DNA from: Macrostomum lignano | Taxonomy: Eukaryota | Reading direction: 5' to 3' | DNA length: 64,000 nt | NCBI GenBank assembly: GCA_002269645.1 | Contig: NIVC01000689.1 | Span: 62,001-126,000, forward strand | Shown: one piece after another, positions 32,310-62,800 of the stretch | How positions within the stretch are numbered: position 1 is the stretch's first letter | Layout of the letters: each line of letters starts with the position of its first letter | Translations under genes and position numbers: made by a program | The notes under the pieces: generated by a model | Seen by the model: the letters and a program-made list of their open reading frames with translations, nothing else | What the model was told of the DNA's origin: nothing | Database searches by the model: none

Positions 32310-32466
32310 GGCATTCCATGTGCAGTAGGAACAAGCAGAGCCCATATGCCAGCCAATGACAGCTCAGCCTCAGGCAACTCCCCCTCCCAAGCACCTGCAC
32401 GGATACAAAAACAATTGCCAGGGTCCAGCGGTGCAGTAAGCAAATCAACGATTGCAGACCATAAAA

Positions 32467-32644
32467 ATGACAGCTCATACAAAGCTTATTGATGAAGCGC
32501 AGAGACTGGATGGTGAGTCTCTCACGGACTTGCTGGATCTGAGGCTGCACTATCAAATCCAGCAGCAGCAGCAGCAGCAACAGCAGCGCCAAAGAAGAGC
32601 CCTTCAGAGACTCCGACGCGGGCAGACCATAGCTGAATGCGATT
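32467..32644 (+). CDS. Orphan ATG exon with poly-Q, candidate alternative first exon of the HCN gene
   Basis: [59 protein letters not shown] ending GATT|GTAAGT in phase 1. A second phase-1 donor, GATG|GTGAGT, follows 32512. Confidence 0.5.
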
Positions 32645-38157: not shown

Positions 38158-39190
38158 ATGGGCACGAGGGAAGGACAAGAGAGAGAGGCAGGGGAAGGAC
38201 ACGAGAGAGGCAGGGGAAGGACACGAGAGAGAGAGAGGCAGGGGAAGGACACGAGAGAGAAAGGCAGGGAAGGACACGAGAGAGAGGCAGGGAAGGACAA
38301 GAGAGAGGCAGGGGAAGGACACGAGAGAGAAAGGCAGGGAAGGACACGAGAGAGAGGCAGGGAAGGACAAGAGAGAGGCAGGGGAAGGACACGAGAGAGA
38401 GAGAGGCAGGGAAGGACACGAGAGAGAAAGGCAGGGAAGGACACGAGAGAGAGGCAGGGAAGGACACGAGAGAGAGGCAGGGGAAGGACACGAGAGAGAA
38501 AGGCAGGGAAGGACACGAGAGAGAGGCAGGGAAGGACACGAGAGAGAGAGGCAGGGGAAGGACACGAGGGAGAGGCAGGGGAAGGACACGAGGGAGAGGC
38601 AGGGGAAGGACACAAGAGAAAGGCAGGGGAAGGACACGAGGGAGAGGCAGGGGAAGGACACAAGAGAAAGGCAGGGGAAGGACACGAGGGAGAGGCAGGG
38701 GAAGGACACAAGAGAAAGGCAGGGGAAGGACACGAGAGAGAGGCAGGGGAAGGACACGAGAGAGAAAAGCAGGGAAGGACACGAGAGAGAAAAGCAGGGA
38801 AGGACACGAGAGAGAGGCAAGGGAAGGACACGAGAGAGAGAGGCAGGGGAAGGACACGAGAGAGAGGCGATGGAAGGACACGAGAGAGAGGCAAGGGAAG
38901 GACACGAGAGAGAGAGGCAGGGGAAGGACACGAGAGAGAGAGGCAGGGGAAGGACACGAGAGAGAGAGAGGCAGGGGAAGGACACGAGAGAGAGGCAAAA
39001 AAGGACACGAGAGAGAGGCAGGGAAGGACACGAGAGAGAAAGGCAAGGAAGGACACGAGAGAGAGGCAAAAAAGGACACGAGAGAGAGGCAGGGAAGGAC
39101 ACGAGAGAGAGAGGCAAAGAAGGACACGAGAGAGAGGCAGGGAAGGACACGAGAGAGAGAGGCAAAGAAGGACACGAGAGAGACAAAAGA
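38158..39190. repeat. Purine-rich 22-26 bp minisatellite (GAGAGAGGCAGGGGAAGGACAC)
   Basis: Direct reading; source of ORFs 38054-39267. Confidence 0.95.
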
Positions 39191-39642
39191 GAGATGCAAG
39201 AGTGCCATCCGACAGCCGGGAAAAAGAGTTAAAGAAAGGAAGAGAGCCCTTAAGGAGTGACCAATGATGAGAAAGAGGAAAAGAAGAAGATTAAAGCCAT
39301 ATATTGAACACGCGGGAAATGAAGTAATTTTAAAGTAATTCCCCAGGTCCGAAATTTTGCAAAAAGTCTACCGCTAATAAGGACTTATCCTAGCCTAATA
39401 TTGTATAAAGCATTACTATGCCCAAGTTCATTAAGGATTTGCACTTCTTTCCTTGATAGAGGAAGGCAATGAGAGAGAGATGAGACGTGGTACTTGATCA
39501 GCGGTGTGAGCAGCAGCGGCTTGTTAGCGGGGGTGGGTCGGGCAGATGAAAGAGAAAGTGTCAAAGTAAAGATAAGATTGGGCAGTTGGAAGATCCACCT
39601 CCTCTCACGCTGAGCCCCCCCCCCGTTCTCACCCCTGCTCAG

Positions 39643-42600
39643 GCACGGAGTCGCCTTCCCTGTTGGACCGGAGCGACTCGCTGCCAGTGGACGACCTGGG
39701 GATGGGCGAGCGGCTGCAGGCCGGCTTCATTGGCCAGCAGCAGGGGAGGCGGTCAGCGAGGCAGCCGCAGCCGCTGCTACAACAGCCGGCCCCGCCGCCG
39801 CTGCCACCGCCGCCGCTGCCACCGCCTCCGAGTTCAGCCGGGCACAGACGAGGCAGTTTCCAGTCGATGCGAACCCACAGCCTGGACCAGCAGCAGCAGC
39901 AGCAGCAGCAGCAGGCAGAGGGCGGTACAGATGGACTCGCCGCTGCCTCCGCAGCCGACTGCAACAACGGCAAGATGGCGTCAAAATCGATGGATTCGTG
40001 TCTGGACGATCCGATGTCTTCGGCTGATGGACAGCAGATTCAGCAGCCGGTGCCTCAGCAGCAGCAGCAGCAGCAGCAATCGCTGCGCAAGAAGCGTCCC
40101 AGCCTCCGGATGAAGCTCGGCCGCTTCGGCTCTGGCCGGCAATTCGGCCGGAGCGGCAGCGGCAGCGGCAGCGGCGGAGTTGCCAACTCAACGGAGGCAC
40201 CGGCTGGCGACGAGGCCGAAGTCGGCGAGGACTCCCCGCTGAGGGACCAGCAGCAGCAGCAGCAAGGAGCAACATCCGCAACCGCAGTTGGCGACGATCT
40301 TGAACTCGGCGAGCTGGAGGACCCGAAGCAGAGCACGTCCAGCTACCTCAAGGAGCAGTTCTTCGCCTTCTTCCAGCCGTCCGACAACAAGCTGGCCATG
40401 AAGCTGTTCGGCAACAAGAACGCCCTGCTGAAGGAGAAGCGCCGGCAGCAGCAGAGCGGCAAATGGATCATCCACCCGTGCAGCAACTTCAGGTAGGCTG
40501 AGAGAACCGCTCGGAATAAAAGTACAAAAGCGCCGGTGCACCGCAGTAGTGGCAATCAATTTCTGTGCCACGCGAAAAAAACCACAAAAGATGCGCAGGA
40601 AATGAGGAGGAGAAGAAGAAGAAGAGAAGAAGAGGGAGGAAAAGCCGACACTCGGGTCTTTTGGCTGCCTCTTCCGTTTTTTTGCTTTAAACAGCAACAG
40701 AAAATGTTGAAACCCGAAACTGCGTGTTGAGAAACCGGAGAGAAAAATGGATTATAAGACGAACCCCGGTCGAATGAAGACTTGAAACAACTGGTTGGGG
40801 GGGGGGGTTTCTTAATCACTGCAGAAGTCCCTAGCGAGGGCCGGTGCGCGCAGATAAATGACCGAATGCCATGGCTAAGTAATAATAATAATAATAATTG
40901 ATTACACCTGCCCTAATTGGGCCAGATGTGCAACCGACAGCTCAGCCGCAGATATTGCGCGGCGCATCTGAAGGCTGCGTACGCCTGTTCAGTCCAAGGA
41001 CTGGGGGGGGGGGTCGCCACACACAGCCTCAATTACCCCAGCTAATGCTGGCACCCATTTTACAGCTGGGTGAACTGAAGCAATGCAGAGTTGTGTCTCG
41101 CTCAAGGACACAAATTGTTCCGAGTGGATCGGGAATCGAACCCCCGACCTTCAAGTCTTGAGTCCGACGCTCTAGTCACTAGGCTACAGCCCCCTGGCTA
41201 AGTAAAGTAGATAGGAAAACTGTTGCAGCCGACCTCCATCAGTTTTTGCCATAGACAACTCCGGTAGAGAAACATCTCCAACACTGCACAAGAAAGATTG
41301 GAACTGCTAAAAGTTTTGCATCTCATAAAAAATGATCACTTCATAAACTTGTGACTCCACCTCGAACGATAAGAAGTTGAGATTTTGTGAATCTTGTGCA
41401 ACCGAATTTTCAGGATCTGTGTCCAGTTCTGCTTAAGCAGTCCATGTTCGATCCAAAGGATATCCGAAAGTTGGCCGTCCAGTTCCCGCCAATGACGCTT
41501 ACACTTCTGATGAAATTGCTTGGGGCTACTGATGGGGCTGCCCCAGCAACATTTTTCATTTTTTAGTCTGAAGCCAGCCTTGCCTGCCTCTGGCTGATTG
41601 CCAGTCAGCGGATTCTGCTTCCGCAAGAGAAAGTCTGGTGGATTAATCAGATTAGAGTGAAAGGTTGCTTCGGCACCTCTGCTTTCTGCCAAATCTCTCT
41701 CTAAATGGTTTTTATTCCCTGCCAAATTTTGATTGGCGCCTGATGGTGAATTGGGAGGAATATTTATGCAGGCTCCGGCACTCGACAACTTAACAAGGCT
41801 AAGAGTGCCGGTTGGTTTTAAGTGTCTGCTTGTGCTTCGTAGTATGACTTCTAACAGAACATGACGCTTAATTTTAACGAAGATCCGATTCATAATTTAC
41901 AAAAAGATTAGTTAGATAAGATAAAAGATAAAAGATGCTGAGATCCCCATCCCGAGTCCCAAAGATGCTAAGATCCCCATCCAGAATCCCATAGATGCTA
42001 AGATCCCCATCCAGAATCCCATAGATGCTAAGATCCCCATCCAGAATCCCATAGATGCTAAGATCCCCATCCAGAATCCCATAGATGCTGAGATCCCCAT
42101 CCAAAATCTCACAGATGCTGAGATCCCCATCCAAAATCCCACAGATACTGAGATCCCCATCCAGAATCCCACAGATGCTGAGATCCCCATCCTAGATCTC
42201 CAGTGCCCCCAGATTCACCAAAATGCTGAGATCCCAATTCTAAAAACCTCAGCCCCAAAGTGTCCCCCCCCTCTAAATCTTATGCAAATCAAAGCGAATT
42301 GCGTTTAAACGATCGAAAAGAGAGAGAGAGAAAAAATTCTGCTTCAAGCGGCTCGTTAAACGCCAACCCATTCGCCTCATTTGAGGACGGCCCGTGCACC
42401 GGCATCGGCTCAGGCCGGCCCAGCAATCAGCAATGGAAGAAAATGGAAGCAGACGAACAGAATTCGTGAAACAGGACTGGGGAGAGGGGATGAGCTCAGA
42501 GCAGTGTTGGAGCTCCGAGTGATCGACCAGTTGGTTTTCTCCTCTGCCTTAATAACGAGAGAGTTGGAGGCTCAGAGAGGTGCAGTGGACAACAAGTGCG

Positions 42601-45600
42601 CACAGTCGGGCTTTCGGCCAACTCATTCCCCGCTAAATCCTTAGGAATGTTTTTCTCCGTGTGCCCGCCCCGGTCTCTTCCCGCCCTCATTCCCCAGCTC
42701 GTCACGCCGAAGAATCGATTTCATCGAAGTATCAATTTTAGCCCTTGGAAAGCCGACAAATCACCGCACCCCTGTCTTCATCCAGCAGTCAAAACTATGC
42801 TCGTATGATAAATGAAAAATATTCGAATCCCAAATATTTCAAATTTCATAAATGCCGGGATCCCCATCCCGAATCTCATCGGTTCTGAGATCTCCATCAC
42901 AAATCCCTAGTCCATCAGATGCTGAGATCCCTATCTCGAGTTCCATAGATGCTGAGATCCCTATCTCGAGTCCCATAGACGCTGAGACCCCCATCCAGAA
43001 TCCCATAGACGCTGAGATCCCCATCCAGAATCCCATAGATGCTGAGATCCCCATCCTGAATCCCATAGATGCTGAGATCTCCATCTCGAATCTTCTAGAT
43101 GCTGAGATCCCTATATTCGAAATTCGACCATTTGTTAACCGCCTTCCGAGGTTTTGAGTAACAATCCGCCCTGACGTATCCTTCTGGGTGCTCAGGCGTC
43201 AGCGGAATGGGCATGGACTGCTTAAAAGTCTGTTTTGTATATTCTTTTAATGCTAATTTACAGTATAGGTTTAGCTAATAGGGAGTTTCTAGTGAAGACC
43301 CTTTCTGCTGACATACTTTTTACTTTTGACATGTGTACACAGATAAGTGTACGAGTACACACTCCGTGCCCTTAGGGTTAATCCCGGTGAGCTCACTACT
43401 AATTTCTTTTATATTGCAGATTCTATTGGGACTTGCTAATGCTGGTGCTGCTAATCACCAACCTGGTTGTGCTGCCCGTGGCCATCTCATTTTTCAACGA
43501 TGACCTCAGCCCGCAATGGATCATTTTCAATTGCGTGTCAGACACTATTTTCCTCAGCGATATTGCCGTCAACTTTCGGACTGGTGAGGCCATTTCTTCT
43601 ATTGGCTGAGGGAGAGAAAAAAAGGTGTTGGGCTAGGGACGGCGGAGAATTTGGCCAGCGCTGATTGGCTAGGAAGGGAAAGAGTTTTATGTTCCGAGGG
43701 TAAAAAGGTAGACGGGCTCCGATTGGCTGGGGGTGCTTTCAAAGTTTAGAGCACATTTTCTGGTTTACTGCTTCTTTTGTAAACGCCTTCGCAACAGATC
43801 CCAGGAGGATACTAAATGCATCGTCGATTATGATAGGCTCGTAAATATACGTTCCAAAGACTACTCAAGTAGAAGGACGGGACACTAATTTTCTTGGAAA
43901 AATTAGCAGAATGGCTTTACCAAAAAATATACATTACAGAGAATGGAGATTTTTATTTTTCAGCACAAAAACTTTTATTGCTTTCGATAGGAGGCAGACC
44001 TAATTTTCATCTTTTGATATGACTTGACTTTCCTATATAGCTCTATTGATATTCATTTAGCTTTTTGTTCAGCAAATTAGGATTCTATGCTAATTTTATA
44101 TCATACGTACATTAAAGGACAGTGATAAATGTTATCACTGGGTTCTAATACCTTCAGCACAGCCTCACTAACAGAACTGAGTAAAGCGAATGATACAGTC
44201 GAACACCTACTCAACTCGGCCCTTATGTCGAGAGCACTTTTCTATAGCCCTCCAATAGCTACTTCACGCTTCAGTTGACCCATCGACCTCTCAGCTTGTC
44301 TTATGCCCGTACCCCACTCAAGACACTAATCAGCCCTCAGCTGCAACCCTCCATCAACTCTTCCTCTCCACTCTTCTCCTCCGCTGTTCTGCAGGCGTCA
44401 TTACTAACGATTTTGCGGAAGAGATTATACTTGATCCGAAAATGATCGCCCAGCACTACATGAAGTCCTGGTTCTTCCTCGACCTAATCTCGTCTATTCC
44501 TATGGACTATATTTTCCTGGTGCTGAACCAGCGGAACAATATGAGCCAACTGATGCACGCAGGTAAGGAAACAACTGAAATTGATTAATATTTTTTATAT
44601 GTATGACAACTAATTTACTAGAGAGCAGCTAATCAGAGGCTAACTGACAACCCAATACCCCAGTGTCATTCTCTGCCCCAGCCCAGCCAATCAGAGGCTA
44701 ACTGGACAACCCAATACCCCAGTGTCATTCTCTGCCCCAGCCCAGCCAATCGGAGGCTAACTGACACCAAATACCCCAGTGTCATTCTCTGCCCCAGCCC
44801 AGCCAATCGGAGGCTAACTGACAACCCAATACCCCAGTGTCATTCTCTGCCCCAGCCCAGCCAATCAGAGGCTAACTGACACCAAATACCCCAGTGTCAT
44901 TCTCTGCCCCAGCCCAGCCAATCGGAGGCTAACTGACAACCCAATACCCCAGTGTCATTCTCTGCCCCAGCCCAGCCAATCGGAGGCTAACTGACAACCC
45001 AATACCCCAGTGTCATTCTCTGCCCCAGCCCAGCCAATCGGAGGCTAACTGACAACCCAATACCCCAGTGTCATTCTCTGCCCCAGCCCAGCCAATCGGA
45101 GGCTAACTGACAACCCAATACCCCAGTGTCATTCTCTGCCCCAGCCCAGCCAATCAGAGGCTAACTGGACAACCCAATACCCCAGTGTCATTCTCTGCCC
45201 CAGCCCAGCCAATCGGAGGCTAACTGACACCCAATACCCCAGTGTCATTCTCTGCCCCAGCCCAGCCAATCGGAGGCTAACTGACAACCCAATACCCCAG
45301 TGTCATTCTCTGCCCCAGCCCAGCCAATCGGAGGCTAACTGACAACCCAATACCCCAGTGTCATTCTCTGCCCCAGCCCAGCCAATCGGAGGCTAACTGA
45401 CAACCCAATACCCCAGTGTCATTCTCTGCCCCAGCCCAGCCAATCGGAGGCTAACTGACAACCCAATACCCCAGTGTCATTCTCTGCCCCAGCCCAGCCA
45501 ATCAGAGGCTAACTGGACAACCCAATACCCCAGTGTCATTCTCTGCCCCAGCCCAGCCAATCGGAGGCTAACTGACACCCAATACCCCAGTGTCATTCTC

Positions 45601-48600
45601 TGCCCCAGCCCAGCCAATCAGAGGCTAACTGACAACCCAATACCCCAGTGTCATTCTCTACCCAGCGCAGCCAATCAGAGGATAACTGACAACCCAATAC
45701 CCCAGTGTCATTCTCTGCCCCAGCCCAGCCAATCAGGGACTCCAGCTAAAAAATGATTTCCTCACTTCATTAAAAAGGTCGAGCCCTGAGAATCCTGCGT
45801 CTAGCGAAGCTGCTCAGTCTGCTGCGGCTGCTTCGACTCTCCCGATTGGTCCGCTATGTCAGCCAATGGGAGGAAGTGAGTTTTTTATTTATAACTTCTA
45901 TGAAGAGTTTAAGTCGAATATGTACGAGTACACCATTCACCTATTGGATTGTATTTTACTAATGAATAGACTTTGTCATTATGATTTCTATTAATTTTCA
46001 AATGTAAGTTACAGCATAGTTAACAAGGACTCGCAAGTCGTGGAAAATGTTTGAAGTCAAATTGATTTTAAAAAACCTTTTTTATCTAAAACTCTGTATC
46101 TAAATTTATTTAAAGATTTGCTTCGCAGATATTAGCCAAAATATCTAGCTCAAAAGTATGTATAAAGTATTGAATACATCATGTACTTACCATGTCCCAC
46201 GAGGGACAGACCTAAGTGATTTGAGTGAGTGGGAGCCTGCTTACATATCCATGTGGGTGCTCAGGTGTCAGTGCGGAATGGGAGTGACTGCTTGCCTCTT
46301 TGCCGGGTCAACTGCCGCCACAGACAGCTCCAGCATTCACAGCCCCTTGACAGCTAATAGTTTGGTTAGAGGCAACCAGCGACACACTGCAGCAGACATG
46401 AGCTCCGTCACTCCCCGAGGACTTATCCGTCTTCTTTTGCCTCGCGTTACGCTTTCAGTTTTTTCAAATAGCCAGCAAATGCTTCGGCATCATCAAGCTG
46501 GTGCTCATTATGATGCTGCTGGGACACTGGAACGCCTGCTTCCAGTTTCTGATACCGTTTCTAAACGATTTCCCGCCGGACTCCTGGGTGGCTAAGCGCG
46601 GACTGAAGGTGACAAAAATCTGTGCAGGCTACTTATAGTAGCTTATTGGATGGCTGCCTCTGGATCGGTGCTGATCGTGTGGGGGGCAGGGGTTTATAGC
46701 CAGCCCCCAGATTCTGCACCAACCCTCCCAGCCTCTCTGGACTGATGAAGGCGATGCATGACGCCGTAGCCTTCTAATCCAAGGATTTCTAACGAGCAAC
46801 AGGACTGAACGCGGACTCCTTTAAACGTCTGGACTAGAAATGAGCCGGTCTGCTGTTAATGATGAAGATGGTTGAAAAATAACTCTTTTTTATAAGTTTT
46901 TATAGCAAATTAGGATAATAACTGATAACCCCAAATGGTTTAATTTGGGCTTTTTCGGCTCATTTCTAGTCTCTAAGTGTTTAAAGGTCCATGGCCAAAT
47001 TAAAAAAACTTGAAGAAAAGTTCATGGACCACTGGTCTCTAATGAGTTAAATAATGCCAGTTGTCCATGAGTTCAGCACCTACTGAGAGCATTATTAAGT
47101 CAACATAGTGTTTTTTCAATGTTCTGAGGTCACAGGTCGCAGGTTTATAGAGTATGGTTTAGGAAAAAATGCAAAAACGATAACAACTGTTCCCATCTCT
47201 TTGAAGCGAAATGATCGCTTTAAATAGAATATCCATAATTTTTGTGTTAAGGTTGCAAATCTTCTTAGAGGTAGGAAATTCGGCCTTAGTTTTTTTTCAA
47301 AAAGTTCTTAAACTTTAGTTATTTTAATTAACAGTCCATGCTTCTAACTCGGAAGATCCCTGGATTGGAAGCGTCAAGTCCAGTTTGGCTGTTATTCCGT
47401 ATGTAGCCCAGTAGCTATCGCTATTTTCTCTGGCAGTTTTCGAAGCGTCAGTGGCAGGATTAGGGATTGGATATTGAATTCTAAGAATTCCACTTATTGC
47501 CGAACACCACTCAGACGGTGTTGATCACCCAGGGAGAAGCGAAGCATCAACACATATGATTCGGGAGTCCCGATGTTTTTTGCACTTTCATAGCTTTGTT
47601 GTTCCTACTGATTTTTTCTCTAGCAAATGCCATTCTAAGAAGCACTCCACGAGCTTTGTTTGTTTTTTTAATTTAACTCGTTGCTGATCAAGACATTAAT
47701 GCTATTGATAATTGTGTGATCCGCGCACCGACATAATGTGCTTATATAAGTCCGTCCTACCCTAGCAACGCGCACTCAAAACCCTCGCTTTCAGCTGCTG
47801 AACGTTGCCAATAAATTTATGGGAATATTTAATCTCGTGCTGCTCATGCTGCTGCTTGGCCACTGGAACGCCTGTCTGCAGTTTCTCATCCCGTTTCTGC
47901 AAGAGTTCCCAGACCAATCCTGGGTGTCTCGCTGCGGACTCAAGGTGAATTTGCCCCTCCTCCTGGCGCTTGTTGCCATGGCGATGAAGCGTCGATATCG
48001 CAATAAATATCGCATGCGACAATTCCTTGCAAGTTTCGAAGCGTTAATGCAGCAGTTTAGGACTGGAGGGGAATTTTGTTGGTGCGCACATCTGCACCTA
48101 ATTGGAGCGCACGGATGTACATGTACTGAGCAAAAGGGTTGGACCACCAATATGATCAAGCGCACTATACGAGCGTATCATGCTTACATCGTATCATGTT
48201 TACATGCAAGCTCGTCCGCATTTTGTGCAAAACTGCTTCATTCACAGCGACACCATTGAACAATAATTTTCTGGGCCAGAGGTGCACAAATTGCACAATA
48301 AAATATTTAGGCGTAAAATTTCCGAAAGATACAATAAATATGCTAAGCATACCATTGAAACTTGGGCCCAATTTCATAGAACTCTTTGATGTATATTTAT
48401 CAGCTCTCTAAACAGAGTTTTGCCCGCAGCCCTCCTAAATTGGGCTCCCAACCGATCTGAAAGCGTCTAGGGGACTGGTTGCCAAGTTGTTCATGAAATC
48501 GGGCCCTGGAGTATGCAGCATTGGTTATAAATGGCAATATTAATTTGCTTAATGCATCCCAGTTGTTTATGCTTGCACTTCTCTTGACCTATTTTATATA

Positions 48601-49913
48601 CAGCAGCTTGTCTATATCGCATACACTGTCTGCAGAAGTACTTGTTGCTACCCTAATTTGGTGCCGATAACTTTTTTACCCTGCGTGAAAACAAGTTTTT
48701 AACCCTATTGATCAGTTGAAGTGGGCGGTGATTTCGGGGCGCGAATCCCGCCACGCACTTTCAGCTGCTGAACGTTGCCTCCGTGTTCATGCGGGTGGCC
48801 AACCTCATCTGCCTGATGCTGCTGCTGGCGCACTGGAACGGCTGCTTGCAGTTCTTGGTGCCGGCGATTCAGGACTTTCCCAAGGACTCTTGGGTTAAGA
48901 AGCTGAACATGCAGGTAGAGCCGCCGCAGCTGCCCCTCCTTGAACCAGACTTTCAAAATCGGATCTTGTTGCACCTTGAGTTCTGTTTTTTTCTTTCAAT
49001 TTTATTACCTGTATAAACCCATGTTTTTGTTTGTTTATTTATTATGTGGACAAGATCAGCCTATCACCAGATTATTTTATTGCCTCACTAACTTTGCTTA
49101 GTCATATAGATGTGAAACCAAGCAATAATTCATAATCAAGGTGCAGTTTATCGAGGCACCATCGAGCGGTAGGACCTGGGCTCGAATCCTGACAGGGGAT
49201 CTTCAAGGAAGTCACCTTTCGGAAAATACCAGAGGCAATACGGTGGCCTGCTACGCATCCACGTGTACAGTTTCCATGTGTCCCGAGTACACAACACAGG
49301 CGCACAGAACTAACATTTGGCCTCATATTTTTAACAACTAAACCGAAAAAGAACTGCAGCAAAAGTAGCCAATTAACAAGCAGCCTCACCAATGAAAATT
49401 TTCTTGACACTGCATTATTTTCTAATCAATTATTCTGCGCCTATATACCAACGCCACTTTCTAGTCATACTGCTTTCGGTTATTTAACTAGTTTTGCGAC
49501 ACATAATTCGCATTATCATTTTCAGATTTTTAAGCAAGCATATTAGCAGTGCCAGTAATCACTGATATATTTTCGCTATGAATACAATAAACTAAGCATT
49601 AGCCTAGGGTTGTAGCCTAGTGGTCAGAGCGTCGGACTTACGACTGAAAGGTCGGAGTTCGATTCCCGATCCCACGCAGAACAATTTGTGTCCTTGAGCA
49701 AGACACTTAACTCTGCATTGCTTCAGCTCACCCAGCTGTAAAATGGGTGCCAGCATTAGCTGGGGTAATTGAGGCTGTGTGTGGCGACCCCCCAGTCCTT
49801 GGACTGAACAGCCGTACGCAGCCTTCAGATGCGCCGCGCGATAGCTGCGGCTGAGCTGTCGGTTGCACATCTGGCCCAATTAGGGCAGGTGTAATCAATT
49901 AATAATATTATTA

Positions 49914-49952
<39 letters not shown>

Positions 49953-52900
49953 GTAATGTATGTAGAAATCAAAAGCAAGAACTATATTATTAGTTTATCA
50001 GTAGTTTCCATCCACTATTATTGCCATAACATTGCCATAATTGCCAAAACATAACATCCTATAAAGAAGTATAGAATTTTTGCTTTTTTGCTGACCAATT
50101 TGGAACGCTGCGACCTGGGATTGTCACACTGTGATCTGGGATTGTCACACTGTGATTTAGGAGTGACTTAACACGGCGATTTATGCGACTGTCTCATCTT
50201 CGATCGTAAATAAAGCTTGTGAAATGGCCTTCCCCAACGGACAAATGGCATTTCGGAGCGCTTTTTTCAATGGTTGATTTCGTTAAATTTTCATGCAACA
50301 ATGAAGCGCGTAAGCACACTAAAACCGCACTTAATAAAGCACCGCATAGTGCTTGCATAGAGCATATATAGCTGCATGCCGATAAAGTCATGTTTCCGCA
50401 ATCATCGCAGTGTGTACAGTTTCAAAATTGTTCAGATTATGAGAGCTTTAAATCTGTAAAGTAAAAAAAAAGTTTTTTTACAAACGACGCTTCGAAATTT
50501 GCCAACGCAGCGGCCTTCGTTTCTGTAGCGGCTTCTCAGGCTTGGCAATGTTTGAGTGCAGTAAGAGGCATCTGTCAGGACGCAGGCTGACTCTGGTTGC
50601 TAGATCATAAAGTACTGGAAATCTGTGAGGTTTAGAAGATAAACTGGGTGCTGGTTCGGATTGAAAATCGATAATGTTAACTAAATTTTGGCTTGGTATT
50701 TCTACCGTTAATTTGAATTAATAAAACAAGAAACCTGCCATGAGACCGCAGCTGCAGCGAAGGCCTTGCGAACCCCTTCCCCCCCCCCCTGAACACCCTA
50801 CCTAACGATATTACTAGCTAACTCTCTCATTTTTATTAACCAATTTATGTATAACTTCTGATACAAATCGTTGAATCGAATTTTCCCAAACACACAACCC
50901 GCGAACGTCACGAACTGGACCAGGAGGCGCACTGGTTCCGCCAGTACACCTGGGCACTGTTTAAAGCCATGAGCCACATGCTCAGCATTGGCTACGGGCA
51001 GCATCCGCCGACCAGCATCAGCGAGGCCTGGATCACCATTGTCAGCATGATGACCGGCTCCTCATGCTACGCCCTGTTCGTTGGACACGCGGCCGCTCTC
51101 ATACAGAGCTTCGACACGTCAAAACGGCTGTACAGGGAGAAGGTGAGTCAGGGAAACTGGCTTTGCGTGTGCCATTGTGTCTGTTACATGTAATGTCAGA
51201 GTGTCTATGTGTTCTGATGTCAGAATGTCTCAGTTGCCTGTGTGTCTTGGTGTCATCGAACATTGAATCGTCTAGGGCCTTAGTATCTTTTATCTGGTTG
51301 TCGGAGTATGTTTTAGTGTCTGGAATCAAAGTGTCTTTCTGCAGGAGATTCGTGTTTGTCGTCTTGGTGGTCCAGAGTCATGTTTTCTGACTGTCGTCTA
51401 TGCACCTGAGCGTCTGATTGTATTGTGATGATAAACACTCCTGTCTGTGTTTAGTAACTGTTTGATCGACTGGTCGTTCTCGTCTCTGTGCCTTTTGTCT
51501 CTAAAACTTTCTCCTGGCCAACTCAGTTCAAGCAAGTGGAGGAGTACATGGCCTACCGCAAGCTGCCGAGAGCGCTTCGCCAAAGGATTGCGAACTATTA
51601 CGAGCATCGGTATCAGGGCAAGATGTTCAATGAGAACGACATCCTCAGCGAGCTGTCCGAATGCCTTAGAGAGGTGAGTTTATCTGGGAGTTACATCAAT
51701 TTTTCGAAAATTAAGTAAAATGGTTTTCGTGTACTTACGAACTCACTACAAAGACACAAATTGGGTACCAAGTTGAGTCCATTGTCAGAGACTGCCGAAA
51801 TGTTTATGTAATCTCGTTCGGCCATCCCGCAGCAAATCATCAACTATAACTGCCGCGCCTTGGTGGCGGCCGTGCCCTTCTTCACCTACGCCGATCAGGA
51901 CTTTGTCTCCGAAGTGGTCACCAGGCTCAAATACGAGGTGTTCCAACCGGGCGATCTGATTATCAAGGAGGGCACCATCGGCACCAAGATGTACTTTATT
52001 CAAGAGGGCATTGTTGACATCATCACTCGTGATGGGGAGGTGGCAACGAGCCTGTCCGATGGGTCCTACTTTGGCGGTGAGCGGCGCGTCAGTTAGGGTT
52101 AGGGTTAGGGTTAGGGTTAGGACTGTGTAGCACTAGAACATGCAAACTTTCCTAACTAGACTAACTAGACTTTAAGCTTTTGCCGGACAACAATGCAATT
52201 TTTCTGCAATTTAACACCTATTTATTGGTTCCCAGTAAACCAATTTGTCGAGCTAGTAGGCTGCTGCTGCTCTGCTCCATCATCGGTTAGAATTCTGGAT
52301 TGGACTGGGTAGGGCTCTCCTCCACTCGGCACGCGGGCTTCTGCGCATGGGAATTAACCGCAGGTATTGAGTGGCCGCTAATTGAGTTTGCGACTCCCCA
52401 CGGATCCAAATAAGCCTTGGGACTCGAAATCTGAGAGTTCTACTCCTGCTGTCTCTGTTCCCCGCACCTATCTCTCACTCTCTCACGCTCTCGCTCTTTC
52501 ATTCCGGTTTCCCAGATTGAATCCGGTGTTGGTTAATCGCCTTCTTCCACCTTAGTTCTGCTGAGGTCGGGCCTGGTTTAACTTATGGATAGATTGCGAA
52601 TATGAGATGAAGCGTCTTGTGCGTTGCAGTTCGAACTTTCTTCTGCGAACAGGAGGCGAGTGAGAGCGTGAGTAAGAGAGAATAAACGGGGAGAATTTTC
52701 CCGTCCCAGCATATAGTGCCCTCAGGGATTCCGTGTGCAGGGCTGCGACCGCTAATGAGGGCCGAGTTGATTTCCAGAGCTGGCGCAGGAACGGAGGGAT
52801 ATTGGCCGGAAGGATGGTTAAGATTGGGGAATGCAGTTCCTTTCCCTGGTTAATAAGTTCGAGTAGGTGAAGCGACTTATTAATGAGATATCACTATACT

Positions 52901-53799
52901 CGAGTAAGAGTAAGATTGCAACAAGGAGCAGGCGGCTGCAGGCATGGTTACAACTAGACATATAAAGTCCCACTGGCCAAGCAAATGTAACTCAAAGGTA
53001 CCTATTTGAGTTTTGAGCAACTTAGGAAGCTGTTTACCCATGTATGCTGAATTTCGACTCACACGTTGACCCACGCTGAATATAGAATCGTTTGGACCTA
53101 TTGGATAGTTTGACGCATTTTGACCCATTCCACAGTCGACCCATTTCAACTTATGTCGACCCTTATTAACCTACGTGGACCTTACGTTCACCTCTGACCG
53201 ATCGCGCAGAGATCTGTCTGCTGACAAACGCCAGACGAGTGGCCAGCGTCCGTGCTGAGACCTATTGCAACCTGTACTCGCTGGAGCGGGAGAACTTTCT
53301 CTCGGTGCTGGACAATTACCCGCTAATGCGCCGCACCATGGAGTCCGTGGCGGCTGAGCGGCTCAGCAAGATCGGCCAGAACCCGCAGCTTGTGAGCAGC
53401 CGAGCCGATCTCAAAGAGGACCTCAACCTGGTGAAGGAGATTGTCAACCAGGTGACCCCGGCCACCAGCGATGACAACGACGATAGCTGCGGCGGTGGAG
53501 GCGCCGGCGCCGGCGCGTGCGGAGGCAGCGCGGACTGTGGCGACGGCAAGAAGTCGTCTCCGCCGCACACAGAGCGCCGGAAGTCGGTGGTGAAACTCGG
53601 CCTGCAGAAGCTTGGCCTGTCCTCCAAGTCCAAGTCCAGAGGCAACCTGTTCGCCAATTTCCACCTGGGCGGCCACCATCATCAGCAGCATCAGGACCAA
53701 GATCCCAGCGGGGCGTCAACGTCGCAACAGCCGCCCGGCTACGAGGCGGCCACTTCGGACCAGAGAGAAATCGCCACGGACAAAGAGTCGGCAGTCTGA
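39643..53799 (+). CDS. HCN: Hyperpolarization-activated cyclic nucleotide-gated channel (Ih)
   Basis: Exons 39643-40492, 43420-43583, 44395-44562, 45778-45875 (S4: [32 protein letters not shown]), one of 46459-46608 / 47795-47944 / 48765-48914 (S5), 50924-51142 (pore [16 protein letters not shown]6), 51527-51673, 51833-52076, 53210-53799 (CNBD FGEICLL...RRVASVRA). All phases join. The first listed exon has an acceptor, so the true start is upstream. Confidence 0.95.
40883..41194 (-). mobile_element. tRNA-derived CORE-like SINE, copy B, full length with TSD
   Basis: Same head and body as copy A; (TAA)n tail at about 40883-40898; 11-bp direct repeat TGGCTAAGTAA at 40872-40882 and 41195-41205. 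Confidence 0.9.
41933..42195. repeat. 30-bp minisatellite (GATGCTRAGATCCCCATCCAGAATCCCATA), block 1
   Basis: A second block of the same family lies at 42855-43115. Confidence 0.92.
42855..43115. repeat. 30-bp minisatellite, block 2
   Basis: Same unit and orientation as 41933-42195. Confidence 0.9.
44628..45735. repeat. 58-bp minisatellite, about 19 copies, between the HCN S3 and S4 exons
   Basis: Unit TAACTGACAACCCAATACCCCAGTGTCATTCTCTGCCCCAGCCCAGCCAATCRGAGGC. Confidence 0.96.
46459..46608 (+). CDS. HCN: HCN S4-S5 linker/S5 exon, variant 1
   Basis: CTTTCAG|...|GTGACA; [50 protein letters not shown]; 150 nt, phase 0-0. Confidence 0.88.
47795..47944 (+). CDS. HCN: HCN S4-S5 linker/S5 exon, variant 2
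   Basis: CTTTCAG|...|GTGAAT; [50 protein letters not shown]; 150 nt, phase 0-0. Confidence 0.9.
48765..48914 (+). CDS. HCN: HCN S4-S5 linker/S5 exon, variant 3 (closest to canonical Ih)
   Basis: CTTTCAG|...|GTAGAG; [50 protein letters not shown]; 150 nt, phase 0-0. Confidence 0.92.
49607..49951 (+). mobile_element. tRNA-derived CORE-like SINE, copy C, with (ATT)n tail
   Basis: GGGTTGTAGCCTAGTGG (A box)...GAGTTCGATTCCC (B box)...GTGTCCTTGAGCAAGACACTTAAC...CTGTAAAATGGG...(ATT)n to about 49951. Confidence 0.9.
52092..52121 (+). repeat. Interstitial telomeric-type repeat (TTAGGG)4 TTAGG
   Basis: Direct reading, 15-16 nt after an HCN donor site. Confidence 0.9.
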
Positions 53800-55044
53800 C
53801 TGACACAAGGACTCGCAACACAAGGGCGGTGGGAAATTTTGCATACGCAACAAAATTTTGTTATATTATTATTTTATTTTCGGCATTGTTCTACCCAAAT
53901 TTGAATGGTTCCGCACTGCACGCGTCATTAACAGTACAGCCAGCCGAATTTGAACTTATCCAGTCGTACCCGCGCTCTCTGCCTTCTTTATCTCAACATT
54001 GTTCTTCTATTCTCAAGTTCCTCCTGTTGAGCAAATTCCATTAATTACCCAGTCCTATTTTTGAGCAATCAAGAACCGTTCCACAATAAGTCTGGAATTC
54101 AGGGGTTACGATAGAAAACTTTTTTTCATTAACTTTGGGCCTGGTCAATTCTCTCGTGAAGGTTTTAACAGGCTTTAAGACCTTAAGAAGGAATTATGCT
54201 CTGTCATTTTGTACAGTGTTCGCTATATAGTTCGTTCTTCAGCATATCGATTAGCTCGTAGAAAAGTGCGCCAGTATAAGGGCATGTATTATAAACAGTA
54301 CGCAAATGCCTTCTGGCGACTGCAACGTAAAAGCAGTGCATTTCAGTCACCAGTTCAGCAACGCTTCGGCGACTCTAGACGCGCAAATTTGAACTTATAA
54401 AAAATCAATTTGAAGCCTTTAAAATTCCGACAGAGCCACGCCCTGCCCTCGCGCACCAATCTACTTTTTGCATCCTCACGTGATCTTCATTTTCTTTCTT
54501 CTGCTTTTTTAGTAGCACCCGCTGTACTGCGCCGGTTAATCTCATTAGCTAATAGCATCAAGGACTCATGCTAGCACCGCAGCAGATCTGTTTCCACATT
54601 TTCTGGGCTCAGACTCTGTGTAAGTCAAAGCCATAGGTGCAAATCCTATCCTATGTTTGCTATTCCATAGCTAATTTTATACTCAAAAGCCCGGAATAGA
54701 CGAGAGACAGACGGACGCAAACGAATATGACACTTCGTGGTGTCGTCTGTTATCGGTGTTGTTTTCAAAAGAAATTATCGACTGCCCCCAAGCTACTGTC
54801 GAACCGAAAGATATTTCTGATTATTCGCACCGCTGTTCCTCAGACATTGCCCATTTGAATTCGTAAAAATAATACTTGGATTAGGACAGCTTGAATGTAG
54901 CTACGTCTTTTTGCTTTTTGCTTCTTTATTAATGCAATGCGGAGTAGCCGAATAGCAGTGGAACCCTGTGATTATGGTTATTTGTGAGGGAGTGAACCAT
55001 CTTAGCATTTGGATCATCAAACGATCATCAAACGAGGAGAGTTA

Positions 55045-56084
55045 CTAGGGATGAGGAATCCTGTATGTCTAGAGGTGAGCGATACTGAATGTCTAAGGAT
55101 GAGGTTTAATGAATCTCTAGGGGTGAGGGATCCTGAGTGTCTAGAGTTGAGGGATCCTGTATGTCTAGGGGTGAGGGATCCTGAAGGTCTAGGGGTGAGG
55201 GATTCTGAATGTCTGGGGTGAGGGATCCTGAAGGTCTAGAGGAGAGGGATTCTGAATGTCTAGGGGTGATGGATCCTGAATGTCTAGGGGTGAGGGATCC
55301 TGAATGTCTAGGGGTGCGGAATAATGAATGTCTAGGGGTGAGGGATCCTGAATGTCTAGGGATGAGGAATCCTGTATGTCTAGAGGTGAGCGATACTGAA
55401 TGTCTAAGGATGAGGTTTAATGAATCTCTAGGGGTGAGGGATCCTGAGTGTCTAGAGTTGAGGGATCCTGTATGTCTAGGGGTGAGGGATTCTGAATGTC
55501 TGGGGTGAGGGATCCTGAAGGTCTAGAGGAGAGGGATTCTGAATGTCTAGGGGTGATGGATCCTGAATGTCTAGGGGTGAGGGATCCTGAATGTCTAGGG
55601 GTGCGGAATAATGAATGTCTAGGGGTGAGGGATCCTGAATGTCTAGGGGTGAGGGATCCTGAATGTCTAGGGGTGCGGAATAATGAATGTCTAGGGGTGA
55701 GGGATCCTGAATGTCTAGGGGTGAGGGATCCTGAGTGTCTAGAGGTGAGGGATCCTGAATGTCTAGGGGTGAGGGATTCTGAGTGTCTAGAGGTGAGGGA
55801 TCCTGAGTGTCTAGGGGTGAGGGATCCTGAATGTCTAGGGGTGAGGGATCCTGAATGTCTAGGGGTGAGGGATCCTGAATGTCTAGGGGTGAGGGATCCT
55901 GAATGTCTAGGGGTGAGGGATCCTGAGTGTCTAGGGGTGAGGGATCCTGAATGTCTAGGGGTGAGGGATCCTGAGTGTCTAGGGGTGAGAGATCCTGAAT
56001 GTCTAGGGGTGAGGGATCCTGGGTGTCTAGGGGTGAGGGATCCTGAATGTCTAGGGGTGAGGGATCCTGAATGTCTAGGGGTGA
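55045..56084. repeat. 24-bp minisatellite (GAGGGATCCTGAATGTCTAGGGGT), left part
   Basis: Continues on the far side of the LINE at 57427-57620. Confidence 0.95.
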
Positions 56085-61642: not shown

Positions 61643-61747
61643 CTGCATTGGGGATAATCGGGTAGGTTGAGGATCTTGTGCCAGCAGGTGTCAAAACTTT
61701 GAAAACAAAGAGTTAGCGAGCGCCGAAGTCAAAGGTAAGGTGCGCCA

Positions 61748-62032
61748 AAATGAGATTTGATGGGGCGACAAAATGAGATTTGATGGGGCGACAAAATGAA
61801 ATTTGATGGGGTGACAAAATGAGATTTGATGGGGCGACAAAATGAGATTTGATGGGGCGACAAAATGAGATTTGATGGGGCGACAAAATGGGATTTGATG
61901 GGGCGACAAAATGGGATTTGATGGGGCGACAAAATGAGATTTGATGGGGCGACAAAATGAGATTTGATGGGGCGACAAAATGGGATTTGATGGGGCGACA
62001 AAATGGGATTTGATGGGGCGACAAAATGGGAG
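61748..62032. repeat. 23-bp minisatellite (GACAAAATGAGATTTGATGGGGC)
   Basis: About 12 units. Confidence 0.95.
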
Positions 62033-62559
62033 TTGAGGGTACTAAAATGAGTACGTACTCCTACGATAGCACGATTTTAAGTAGTGAATGAAGTTTCTTA
62101 ATGATAAATTGATGTCAGGATTTTTATGAACTCCTCGGTTATCTAATCAACGCTAAATAGGGTGTTTCCATCGTAATTAGTTTTTCGTGGGAATACATGA
62201 GTTCTGAAATTTTTAGTTAGATTTTTATGAGCTCTTTCTGAAATGAGGGAAAATTAAGACTGTTTGCTGGGCCATCTCCTAGCTGTGGTATGCTGTTTTG
62301 CAGCCGGGGTCTATTGGGATCTTTTTCCCACGAAAATGTGATCCATTTTATACCGTAGTTTCAAATTCATTGCAAGACACGCACGCACATGCTTTACTTC
62401 TTTATATAAGGCAGACACACGAAATACGGAAGATTGATTTCCGTAATTTTATGTTTAGCTATCTGTTAACTACAGATAGCTAAATAGCTGGCTTAATTTC
62501 ACACATCTCAATCTCTGTCTCATTCCACCTGCCTAATCATCTTCCTATATCACCTTTTC

Positions 62560-62800
62560 ACTGTCTCCCTGTCTCACCCTCTCCCTGTCTCACGCTATCC
62601 TTGTCTAACTCTCCCTGTCTCACCCTCTACCTGTCTCACCCTCTCCCTGTCTCACCCCCTCCCTGTCTCACGCTATCCTTGTCTAACTCTCCCTGTCTCA
62701 CCCTCTACCTGTCTCACCCCCTCCCTGTCTCACCCTCTCCCTGTCTCACGCTATCCTTGTCTAACTCTCCCTGTCTCACCCTCTACCTGTCTCACGCTCT
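62560..62800. repeat. CT-rich repeat (CTCTCCCTGTCTCACC) with higher-order duplication
   Basis: Direct reading. Confidence 0.88.

What the first reader, a model, noticed from the sequence alone, without database searches (positions are those of the whole stretch)
46459..47944. Variants 1 and 2 replace residues that keep HCN channels closed
Seen: variant 3 has the canonical [10 protein letters not shown]. Variant 2 has [10 protein letters not shown] (Arg to Gly, new Lys). Variant 1 has [10 protein letters not shown] (Arg to Gly and Asn to Lys). Known, with numbering from memory: the Arg at the start of S5 (HCN2 R339) is needed for normal closure through contact with the C-linker, and the S5 Asn contacts the S4 QWE Trp in coupling that sets gating polarity. 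Inference: exon choice may switch this channel between a classical Ih and leaky, shifted or altered-polarity forms.
Basis: partly seen in the sequence, partly recalled or inferred. Interest (0 to 1): 0.75.

Follow-up and report, generated by a model that had tools for sequence, protein, structure and literature searches.

The report
Three alternative S5 exons, flatworm HCN
A pacemaker-channel (HCN) gene of the flatworm Macrostomum lignano carries three interchangeable exons for one membrane helix; two of them lack the arginine that normally helps hold such channels shut, and that arginine-free version is the only one parasitic flatworms have.

Summary
The window is Macrostomum lignano contig NIVC01000689.1 and holds an HCN/Ih channel gene. 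Three homologous 150-nt, phase-0 exons lie between the S4 exon and the pore exon: v1 46459-46608, v2 47795-47944, v3 48765-48914. Each encodes the end of the S4-S5 linker, S5 and the start of the turret.

In human HCN1 numbering:
- v3 has the canonical R297 and N300.
- v2 has K294, G297 and N300.
- v1 has K294, G297 and K300.

The exons are real and are used singly. A transcript-derived GenBank model at a 97%-identical sister locus joins S4 to v1 to the pore exon. The model at this locus joins S4 to v3. All three exon types persist in two further M. lignano paralogue groups. No v2 transcript was seen.

All 32 readable trematode and cestode HCN S5 sequences carry only the v2-like Gly type, always with Lys three residues earlier. 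Three neodermatan loci hold a single S5 exon. Other HCNs sampled at 56% identity or more keep Arg and Asn.

An intronic 19-mer (50486-50504) is complementary to sites after v1 and after v2. This fits a docking/selector mechanism for exon choice.

That v1 and v2 make leaky or polarity-altered channels is plausible but untested. The Gly type may be a re-wired gate rather than a broken one.

The parts
32458..32644 (+). Upstream coding exon of the HCN gene (5' end not defined)
   Evidence: tblastn of the transcript-derived P0218 against the window. Donor T|gtaagt read from the sequence.
39643..40492 (+). N-terminal exon: low-complexity region plus the HCN domain (Ion_trans_N)
43420..43583 (+). S1-S2 exon
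44395..44562 (+). S3 exon
45778..45875 (+). S4 exon, ending ...RYVSQWEE|gtgagt (constant)
   Evidence: The junction QWEE|FFQIAS is confirmed by P0218.
46459..46608 (+). Alternative S5 exon v1 (K294, G297, K300 in HCN1 numbering)
   Evidence: Used alone in the transcript-derived model PAA85143.1 from the 97%-identical sister locus. Conserved in the paralogue groups.
47431..47449 (+). Candidate selector 1, in the v1-v2 intron, complementary to the docking site (17 Watson-Crick pairs, 1 G-U, 1 mismatch)
47795..47944 (+). Alternative S5 exon v2 (K294, G297, N300), the flatworm-type S5
   Evidence: It is the counterpart of the single S5 exon of trematodes and cestodes. No transcript was seen here.
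47964..47995 (+). Weaker candidate selector 2a, 20 nt after the v2 donor, sharing the GAAGCGTC core
48027..48045 (+). Candidate selector 2b, in the v2-v3 intron, complementary to the docking site (16 Watson-Crick pairs, 2 G-U, 1 mismatch)
   Evidence: In the sister locus, 48046 A>G adds one G-C pair.
48765..48914 (+). Alternative S5 exon v3 (V294, R297, N300), the canonical HCN S5
   Evidence: Joined directly to the S4 exon in GenBank model PAA78447.1 of this locus.
50486..50504 (+). Candidate docking site, in the intron between v3 and the pore exon
   Evidence: With up to 3 mismatches, 0.01 chance matches are expected in the window and 2 were found, both complementary and both inside the cluster. 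It is the only non-low-complexity 19-mer of the cluster introns with two long-range partners.
50924..51142 (+). Pore/S6 exon (SIGYG filter; H392 and D401 equivalents), constant
   Evidence: The junction ...RGLK|EAHWF is in P0218.
51527..51673 (+). C-linker exon
51833..52076 (+). CNBD exon, first part
53210..53799 (+). Last exon: CNBD end, C-terminal tail, stop codon
   Evidence: C-terminus identical to P0203.

Best explanation
Shown: this is a cluster of three alternative exons, each seen used singly where transcripts are available, in a Macrostomum lignano HCN (Ih) channel gene. Each exon supplies the end of the S4-S5 linker, the whole S5 helix and the start of the S5-pore turret. One gene can therefore make up to three channels that differ only in S5.
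- v3 is the ancestral, canonical S5 (R297, N300).
- v2 is the flatworm-type S5 (G297 with K294). It is the only S5 exon left in parasitic flatworms.
- v1 is a derivative found only in M. lignano among the sequences sampled (G297, K294, K300).

Inferred, exon choice: a docking sequence in the intron before the pore exon can pair with a selector downstream of v1 or with one downstream of v2. Either pairing loops out the later alternatives. v3 is used when no pairing forms.

Inferred, function: the isoforms differ in how strongly the gate is held shut when S4 is up (the R297-D401 lock) and in S4-to-S5 coupling around W281/E282 and N300. They should therefore differ in standing (instantaneous) current and/or in voltage dependence. 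Tetramers mixing isoforms could grade these properties. Every Gly-type S5 carries Lys one turn earlier, so the Gly forms are more likely re-wired gates than broken ones.
For: Exon anatomy and homology.

Residue mapping to HCN1.

Identity of the window: 100% match to Mlig_3_7 contig NIVC01000689.1.

Transcript-derived GenBank models (annotation method in PMC5730564):
- PAA85143.1 joins S4|v1|pore in a full-length ORF.
- PAA78447.1 joins S4|v3.

Selection:
- The recent duplicate locus shows 1 synonymous change in v1 and none in v2 or v3, against 1.4-8.6% intron divergence.
- Two other paralogue groups keep v1, v2 and v3 with the diagnostic G, K and R residues. Amino-acid identity is 79-94% in these exons, against about 30-37% in the tails.
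- dN/dS among the exons is 0.20-0.47.

Phylogenetic distribution:
- All 32 readable neodermatan S5 sequences are K294/G297/N300.
- Opisthorchis, Echinococcus and Schistosoma japonicum loci each have one S5 exon.
- In a survey of 50%-identity representatives, every HCN at 56% identity or more has R297/N300, except one K294/G297/N300 representative (P0226) whose S4-S5 sequence is identical to the neodermatan type.
- Manduca isoforms do not vary in S5.

Docking/selector.

Functional roles of the residues: PMC11050684, PMC11189445, PMC7078272, PMC10317503.
Against: - No v2-containing transcript was seen.
- Only two transcript models were accessible, and one of them ends in a retained intron.
- No electrophysiology exists for any flatworm HCN in the searched literature.
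- The constitutive use of the Gly type in Neodermata, with the invariant K294, could mean the isoforms gate much alike.
- The docking/selector pairing is supported only within one species. The comparison locus is 97% identical, so there is no real covariation test.
- Several other long-range intron duplexes of similar predicted energy exist.
- Because 150 nt is a multiple of three, the reading frame does not enforce exclusivity.
Confidence: 0.65

Rival explanations
1. The three isoforms gate essentially alike. K294 takes over the role of R297, for example by pairing with D401 or with lipid headgroups. On this reading the exons were kept for another S5-dependent property: lipid (PA/PIP2-type) regulation at the R297/D401 site, subunit assembly or partner choice, trafficking, or turret/pore properties.
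For: - K294 accompanies every Gly-type S5.
- The Gly type is the sole form in Neodermata, under tight conservation.
- R297 and D401 form a state-dependent lipid site in SthK/HCN (PMC10317503).
- The exons differ at 19-28 of 50 positions, including the turret.
- Polar substitutions at spHCN N370 gate normally.
Against: - In HCN2 and spHCN, loss of this Arg by itself causes incomplete closure.
- Molluscan HCNs keep both K294 and R297, so the Lys does not obviously replace the Arg.
- Keeping both an R-type and a G-type exon in three paralogue groups suggests they are not equivalent.
Confidence: 0.2
2. v2, or v1 and v2, are little-used or decaying exon duplicates. The functional channel of this gene would be the v3 form only.
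For: - No v2 transcript model was found.
- The GenBank model of this very locus uses v3.
Against: - v1 is used alone in a full-length transcript-derived ORF.
- All three exons have intact ORFs and splice sites in this locus and its 97%-identical sister locus. The two other paralogue groups are known only from protein models, some of which truncate v1, v2 or v3.
- dN/dS is well below 1.
- v2 is the counterpart of the only S5 exon of parasitic flatworms.
Confidence: 0.07
3. All three exons are spliced in tandem into one mRNA, as the UniParc/WormBase gene models read. This would give a protein with three S5-like helices.
For: - Models P0128, P0204, P0001, P0121, P0122 and P0132 chain two or three of the exons.
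- The reading frame is preserved, because each exon is 150 nt.
Against: - The transcript-derived GenBank models contain one exon each.
- The chained models truncate exons at arbitrary internal points, which is typical of ab initio prediction over duplicated exons.
- Alternate helices would have to insert in the opposite orientation to their homologues.
Confidence: 0.02
4. The docking/selector complementarity is incidental, being leftover duplicated intron or repeat sequence. Exon choice would instead be set by protein splicing factors or splice-site strength. The repeated GAAGCGT core could be a protein-binding motif.
For: - Other long-range duplexes of similar energy exist in these introns.
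- GAAGCGT occurs four times within 47368-48038, more often than pairing alone requires.
- There is no cross-species covariation test.
- The pore exon has a poor polypyrimidine tract, which hints at factor dependence.
Against: - The 19-mer has two complementary matches where 0.01 are expected.
- It is the only complex 19-mer in the cluster introns with two partners.
- One selector lies in each inter-exon intron, and the docking site lies before the constant exon. That is the layout described for competing RNA pairings (PMC6071210, PMC4691838).
- Similarity among the three copies stops at the roughly 20-nt core.
Confidence: 0.35

Closest known systems
HCN2 R339 / HCN1 R297 - D401(D443) closed-state lock, and the spHCN W355/N370 coupling pair
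   Same: The same positions are involved. This was established by alignment to solved HCN1 and by the published numbering. v3 keeps R297, N300, W281, E282, H392 and D401.
   Different: Here the changes are natural, conserved and delivered by exon choice, not made in the laboratory. The substitutions are R to G with K294, and N to K. In the papers read, the tested substitutions were R to E at the Arg and W, G, A, V, I, D and E at the Asn. W281 is untouched, so the polarity-inverting swap is not reproduced.
Mutually exclusive exon clusters controlled by docking-site/selector RNA pairing (Dscam1 exon clusters, srp; PMC6071210, PMC4691838)
   Same: - Tandem duplicated exons of equal length and phase.
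- One intronic site complementary to several competing sites, with one competing site per inter-exon intron.
- The selectors are direct repeats of each other, as the duplication model predicts.
   Different: - The cluster is small, with three exons.
- It lies in a flatworm ion-channel gene.
- The pairing is only predicted, from one species.
- The docking site lies downstream of the cluster. No upstream partner was found.
HCN genes of parasitic flatworms (Schistosoma, Opisthorchis, Fasciola, Echinococcus, Taenia and others)
   Same: - Same gene family and the same 150-nt S5 exon.
- SIGYG selectivity filter and a short S4-S5 linker.
- Their S5 is 70-80% identical to v2 in most comparisons (66% for one Schistosoma paralogue) and has the same K294/G297/N300.
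   Different: They have a single S5 exon. No R-type exon and no v1-type exon was found in three loci. M. lignano keeps all three types.
Alternative splicing of arthropod Ih genes (insect Ih isoforms; Panulirus PIIH variants, known here only from a source name)
   Same: A single invertebrate HCN gene is diversified by splicing.
   Different: In the eight Manduca isoforms compared, S5 is invariant and the variation lies in the N-terminus, a short insert near S3-S4 and the C-terminus. The primary papers on DMIH/PIIH splice variants are not in the searchable library. An S5 cluster elsewhere therefore cannot be excluded from the literature.

Membership tests
HCN (hyperpolarization-activated cyclic-nucleotide-gated) channel | HCN domain (Ion_trans_N, PF08412) directly before S1 | tested here: met
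   80-81 bits against a cut-off of 27, for all three isoforms.
HCN (hyperpolarization-activated cyclic-nucleotide-gated) channel | Six-TM voltage-gated core with a long S4 carrying basic residues at every third position | tested here: met
   Ion_trans scores 82.6 bits (v1), 91.1 (v2) and 98.7 (v3) against a cut-off of 25. S4 reads [26 protein letters not shown]. The region aligns to HCN1 residues 200-446 at E = 2e-98.
HCN (hyperpolarization-activated cyclic-nucleotide-gated) channel | GYG selectivity filter in the CIGYG context | tested here: met
   GYG is present. The context is SIGYG instead of CIGYG in every flatworm sequence examined.
HCN (hyperpolarization-activated cyclic-nucleotide-gated) channel | C-linker plus CNBD with the cAMP-contacting FGE...RR.AS.RA motif | tested here: met
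   cNMP_binding scores 71-72 bits against a cut-off of 27.5. [19 protein letters not shown] is read from the translation.
HCN (hyperpolarization-activated cyclic-nucleotide-gated) channel | Conserved coupling set W281, E282, R297, N300, H392, D401 (HCN1 numbering) | tested here: not met
   Met by the v3 isoform. Not met by v2 (G297) or by v1 (G297, K300). W281, E282, H392 and D401 lie in constant exons and are kept. Every representative at 56% identity or more has R297/N300, except one with the neodermatan-type S5.
HCN (hyperpolarization-activated cyclic-nucleotide-gated) channel | Opens on hyperpolarization, and cAMP shifts activation | not testable with these tools
   This needs electrophysiology. 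No flatworm HCN recording was found in the library.
Mutually exclusive exon cluster with competing RNA pairings | Tandem homologous exons of the same length and phase between two constant exons | tested here: met
   Three 150-nt phase 0-0 exons, 44-62% identical in amino acids, between the S4 and pore exons.
Mutually exclusive exon cluster with competing RNA pairings | Exactly one exon of the cluster per mature mRNA | tested here: inconclusive
   The transcript-derived models have v1 only (PAA85143.1) and S4-v3 only (PAA78447.1). v2 was not observed. No read-level junction counts are available.
Mutually exclusive exon cluster with competing RNA pairings | One docking site complementary to two or more selector sequences placed one per alternative | tested here: met
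   50486-50504 pairs with 47431-47449 and with 48027-48045. Chance expectation is 0.01 matches.
Mutually exclusive exon cluster with competing RNA pairings | Evolutionary conservation or covariation of the pairings | tested here: inconclusive
   Only a 97%-identical duplicate locus could be fetched. The elements are conserved there, and one change adds a G-C pair. DNA for the paralogous loci is not on record.
Mutually exclusive exon cluster with competing RNA pairings | Exon choice changes when the pairing is disrupted and is restored by compensatory mutation | not testable with these tools
   This needs minigene or in vivo mutagenesis.

The most novel reading that the evidence does not exclude
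A natural, splice-selected switch of the HCN closed-state lock. By RNA-structure-guided choice among three S5 exons, M. lignano would convert one HCN gene between a classical Ih channel (v3) and Gly-type channels that lack the R297-D401 lock. Those Gly-type channels would carry a large voltage-independent or strongly shifted conductance. It would follow that the 'HCN' channels of all parasitic flatworms, which have only the Gly type, are not classical pacemaker channels.
Probability: 0.25. Interest if true: 0.8.

Novelty: new variant of a known kind. Interest (0 to 1): 0.6.

Why it matters
HCN gating polarity and closure have been dissected largely by laboratory mutation of a handful of S4/S5/S6 residues. 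Here evolution offers three versions of S5 in an otherwise identical channel, differing at exactly those residues. All three versions have been kept under selection in several gene copies.

Expressing the three isoforms, with G297R, K294V and K300N swaps, would test directly whether the R297-D401 lock is dispensable, relocatable or tunable.

The finding also shows that trematode and cestode HCN channels all lack the Arg that is otherwise invariant in HCNs at 56% identity or more. This matters for reading them as Ih channels and for considering them as anthelmintic targets.

It also flags a systematic misannotation. Public M. lignano models either chain the three exons or split the gene in two.

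If the docking/selector pairing holds, it would be an example of competing-RNA-structure exon choice outside arthropods, in a flatworm ion-channel gene.

Tried and rejected
- A short query (S4 end + v1 + pore start) returned only four short fragments and not even the known M. lignano proteins. That negative result says nothing about v1 elsewhere.
- The look-up of paralogue P0132 found no contig on record. The docking/selector elements could therefore not be tested at diverged loci.
- Literature searches for S5 splice variants of invertebrate Ih genes and for flatworm HCN physiology found nothing relevant. The search was also unproductive, and one search failed on a term that was too short.
- All-against-all duplex energies were tried as evidence for the docking site. 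They were rejected, because several unrelated intron pairs reach similar energies. The argument rests on sequence statistics and placement instead.
- A transposon origin of the three complementary elements was considered. The similarity is limited to a core of about 20 nt, and the motif occurs nowhere else in the 64 kb at up to 3 mismatches.
- The NJ tree of the 50-residue exons groups v1, v2 and the neodermatan exons apart from v3. The grouping node did not reach 50% bootstrap support, so the deep history is stated as likely, not shown.
- Structure prediction was not run. The tool returns confidence and secondary structure only, with no coordinates. The contacts at issue (K294/R297 to D401, K300 to E282/W281) could not have been measured, and AlphaFold is insensitive to such substitutions.
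- Rfam found no known RNA family in 39000-54000.
Full report
**What the window is**

The + strand from about 32.4 kb to 53.8 kb encodes an HCN/Ih channel. Translation and splice-site reading give these exons:
- an upstream exon ending at 32644
- 39643-40492 (HCN domain)
- 43420-43583 (S1-S2)
- 44395-44562 (S3)
- 45778-45875 (S4, ending QWEE|gtgagt)
- three alternative exons, described below
- 50924-51142 (pore/S6)
- 51527-51673, 51833-52076 and 53210-53799 (C-linker, CNBD, tail)

All three possible isoforms pass the Pfam cut-offs for Ion_trans_N, Ion_trans and cNMP_binding. The core aligns to solved human HCN1 at E = 2e-98.

A fetched locus of Macrostomum lignano assembly Mlig_3_7, contig NIVC01000689.1, is 100% identical to window 40969-63799. 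The organism is therefore the free-living flatworm M. lignano.

**The observation**

There are three 150-nt, phase 0-0 exons with canonical AG/GT borders:
- v1, 46459-46608: [14 protein letters not shown]...
- v2, 47795-47944: [14 protein letters not shown]...
- v3, 48765-48914: [14 protein letters not shown]...

They are 44-62% identical to each other in amino acids. No fourth copy is present.

The HCN1 alignment fixes the numbering:

| Exon | 294 | 297 | 300 |
|---|---|---|---|
| v3 | V | R | N |
| v2 | K | G | N |
| v1 | K | G | K |

W281, E282, H392 and D401 lie in constant exons and are retained. Its coordinates run exactly from the start of v1 to the end of v2.

**Are v1 and v2 real, used exons?**

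The GenBank annotation of Mlig_3_7 was built from RNA-seq-guided and de novo transcripts with TransDecoder ORFs, not by ab initio prediction (PMC5730564).

- Its model for this locus, PAA78447.1, is reproduced exactly by start codon + S1-S4 exons + v3 + read-through into the next intron. It therefore skips v1 and v2.
- The same 90% cluster holds PAA85143.1, from a sister locus on contig NIVC01000344.1. That locus is about 97% identical over the cluster. The model is a 938-residue full-length product reading ...RYVSQWEE|[14 protein letters not shown]...RGLK|EAHWFRQ..., that is S4, then v1 alone, then the pore exon.

So v1-only and v3 usage have transcript support. v2 was not seen in the two accessible models.

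Between the two loci, v1 has one synonymous change and v2 and v3 have none. The introns differ by 1.4-8.6%.

Two further M. lignano paralogue groups also keep v1-, v2- and v3-like exons with the diagnostic residues. In P0132 these read v1 CLGIVKL and v2 ANKFIGIFNL. In P0121 the v3 reads VFMRVVNL. In P0132 the v3 model is truncated before this motif. Identity in these exons is 79-94%. The constant TM exons are 91-100% identical and the N-terminal low-complexity region only about 30-37%; the C-terminal tail could not be scored.

dN/dS among the three exons is 0.20-0.47, with saturated dS.

The public UniParc/WormBase models chain two or three of the exons in tandem, often truncating them. I read these as misannotations.

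**Distribution**

- All 32 readable trematode and cestode S5 sequences, from three paralogue groups, have K294/G297/N300. Examples are [20 protein letters not shown] and ASKFMGICNL.
- The Opisthorchis, Echinococcus and Schistosoma japonicum loci each hold one 150-nt S5 exon between the S4 and pore exons.
- Nemertean, mollusc, insect and vertebrate HCNs have R297/N300. Molluscs have K294 as well.
- In a survey of 50%-identity cluster representatives, every sequence at 56% identity or more to the query has R297/N300. The exception is one representative (P0226) whose S4-S5 sequence is identical to the neodermatan type.
- Among distant HCN-like representatives, K at position 300 together with R297 is common (12 of 70). 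G297 with K or R at 300 occurs twice.
- Eight Manduca isoforms are invariant in S5.
- v2 is 66-80% identical to the neodermatan exons. v3 is 50-60% identical to them and 62-64% identical to the non-flatworm invertebrate S5 sequences (56% to human HCN1).
- The NJ tree groups v1 and v2 with the neodermatan type, but the grouping node did not reach 50% bootstrap support.

The likely history is as follows. An ancestral R-type exon was duplicated early in flatworms. The Gly type arose. Neodermata kept only the Gly type, and Macrostomum kept both and added v1.

**How the exon may be chosen**

A 19-mer at 50486-50504 (GACGCTTCGAAATTTGCCA) lies in the intron before the pore exon. It is complementary to two sites:
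- 47431-47449, in the v1-v2 intron (17 Watson-Crick pairs, 1 G-U, 1 mismatch)
- 48027-48045, in the v2-v3 intron (16 Watson-Crick pairs, 2 G-U, 1 mismatch)

The statistics and layout support a real element:
- With up to three mismatches, 0.01 chance matches are expected in the whole window. Two were found, both on the complementary strand and both inside the cluster.
- It is the only non-low-complexity 19-mer of the cluster introns with two long-range partners.
- The similarity among the three elements ends at the roughly 20-nt core.
- The core GAAGCGT occurs four times within 47368-48038, out of eight copies in the window.
- The layout is one downstream docking site plus selectors that are direct repeats of each other, one per inter-exon intron. 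That is the layout described for competing RNA pairings and for their origin by tandem duplication (PMC6071210, PMC4691838).

Pairing with selector 1 would loop out v2 and v3. Pairing with selector 2 would loop out v3. No pairing would leave v3.

There are caveats. Predicted duplex energy is not distinctive. The only comparison locus is too similar to test covariation, although one change there adds a G-C pair. The reading frame does not enforce exclusivity.

**What the substitutions may do**

Published work establishes the roles of the two positions:
- HCN2 R339E leaves a large instantaneous current, with minimum open probability about 43%. The homologous spHCN R367E behaves likewise (PMC11050684).
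- The HCN1 R297-D401 salt bridge stabilises the closed state (PMC11189445).
- In simulations R297 also binds lipid headgroups, and in the open state it contacts E282 and H392 (PMC10317503).
- spHCN N370 (HCN1 N300) mutated to hydrophobic residues gives about 50% leak. N370E gates normally. W355N+N370W inverts polarity (PMC7078272).
- A W281-N300 hydrogen bond forms on activation in HCN1 simulations.

The exons do hit two of the best-known coupling positions.

The step from there to 'leaky, shifted or altered-polarity' remains inference, for three reasons:
- The Gly type is the only S5 in a whole clade, it is highly conserved, and it always carries K294 one helical turn before position 297. This fits a relocated charge.
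- Lys at 300 is polar, sits next to E282, and may strengthen rather than weaken a closed-state contact.
- W281 is unchanged, so polarity inversion is unlikely.

My estimates are as follows:
- a measurable gating difference between isoforms: about 0.7
- a substantial voltage-independent component in the Gly types: about 0.25-0.4
- inverted polarity: below 0.05

**Comparison and novelty**

The gene is an HCN family member by architecture. The v1 and v2 isoforms fail one family-typical feature, the R297/N300 pair.

Mutually exclusive exons are familiar in voltage-gated channels, and docking/selector control is known in arthropod genes. I found no report of an S5 exon cluster in an HCN gene, nor of the Arg-less S5 of flatworm HCNs. 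The key arthropod Ih splicing papers are not in the searchable library, so this absence is not conclusive.

I class the finding as a new variant of a known kind, of moderate-to-good interest (0.6). It supplies a natural three-way S5 swap in one channel background, and it raises a question about what parasitic-flatworm HCN channels actually do.

Noticed in passing
window 39702-49013 and 50960-53799: GenBank splits this gene into two models. PAA78447.1 ends in the retained intron after v3. PAA78448.1 starts at a Met inside the pore exon. UniParc/WormBase models of the same gene and its paralogues chain v1+v2+v3 in tandem. All of these are probable misannotations caused by the exon cluster.
   Followed up: yes
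window 47788-47809 and 48758-48779: The last 7 intron bases and the first 15 exon bases of v2 and v3 are 100% identical (CTTTCAGCTGCTGAACGTTGCC). The rest of the two exons is only about 70% identical. This suggests gene conversion, or constraint on the acceptor or an exonic enhancer.
   Followed up: no
window 50899-50923: The acceptor of the constant pore exon (...cgtcacgaactggaccag|G) has almost no polypyrimidine tract, unlike the three alternative exons (...ctttcag|). Its use may depend on RNA structure or on factors. M. lignano also trans-splices widely.
   Followed up: no
window 46832-46847 / 46956-46971: A perfect 16-nt inverted repeat, with arms 108 nt apart, forms a local hairpin in the v1-v2 intron. 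Its function is unknown. There is no Rfam match.
   Followed up: partly
window 44626-45734: A 58-bp tandem repeat, 19 copies at 96% match, fills most of the intron just upstream of the S4 exon. Other arrays lie at 41933-42192 and 42912-43111 (30 bp), 55045-56084 (24 bp x 43) and 39000-39183. The region from 20 to 39 kb is dominated by simple repeats with extreme strand skew.
   Followed up: partly
window 50990-51004 (pore exon); all flatworm HCNs: The selectivity-filter context is SIGYG instead of the usual CIGYG in every flatworm HCN examined. The non-flatworm protostome HCNs examined keep CIGYG.
   Followed up: partly
window 49607-49915; L004 12506-12817: A segment of about 310 nt in the v3-pore intron recurs inverted elsewhere in the sister locus at 92% identity, so it is probably a dispersed repeat. 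Nearby sequences (49785-49895) are complementary to 48045-48295 and would also bracket v3.
   Followed up: no
protein P0150 (Ixodes scapularis model): The tick HCN model contains two identical S5 segments in tandem (FLNMASVFMKIFNL..., with Lys at the R297 position). This is either an assembly duplication or another duplicated S5 exon read through by the predictor.
   Followed up: no
proteins P0253, P0261, P0264, P0274 and others: Among distant HCN-like representatives (35-55% identity, taxa unknown), Lys at the N300 position together with Arg297 is common, often with Tyr, Phe or Leu in place of W281. G297 with K or R at 300 occurs in two representatives. The v1 combination therefore has distant parallels.
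   Followed up: partly
window 59983-63799, minus strand: A further annotated gene (556-residue product, no Pfam hit on record) runs off the end of the fetched locus. It was not examined.
   Followed up: no
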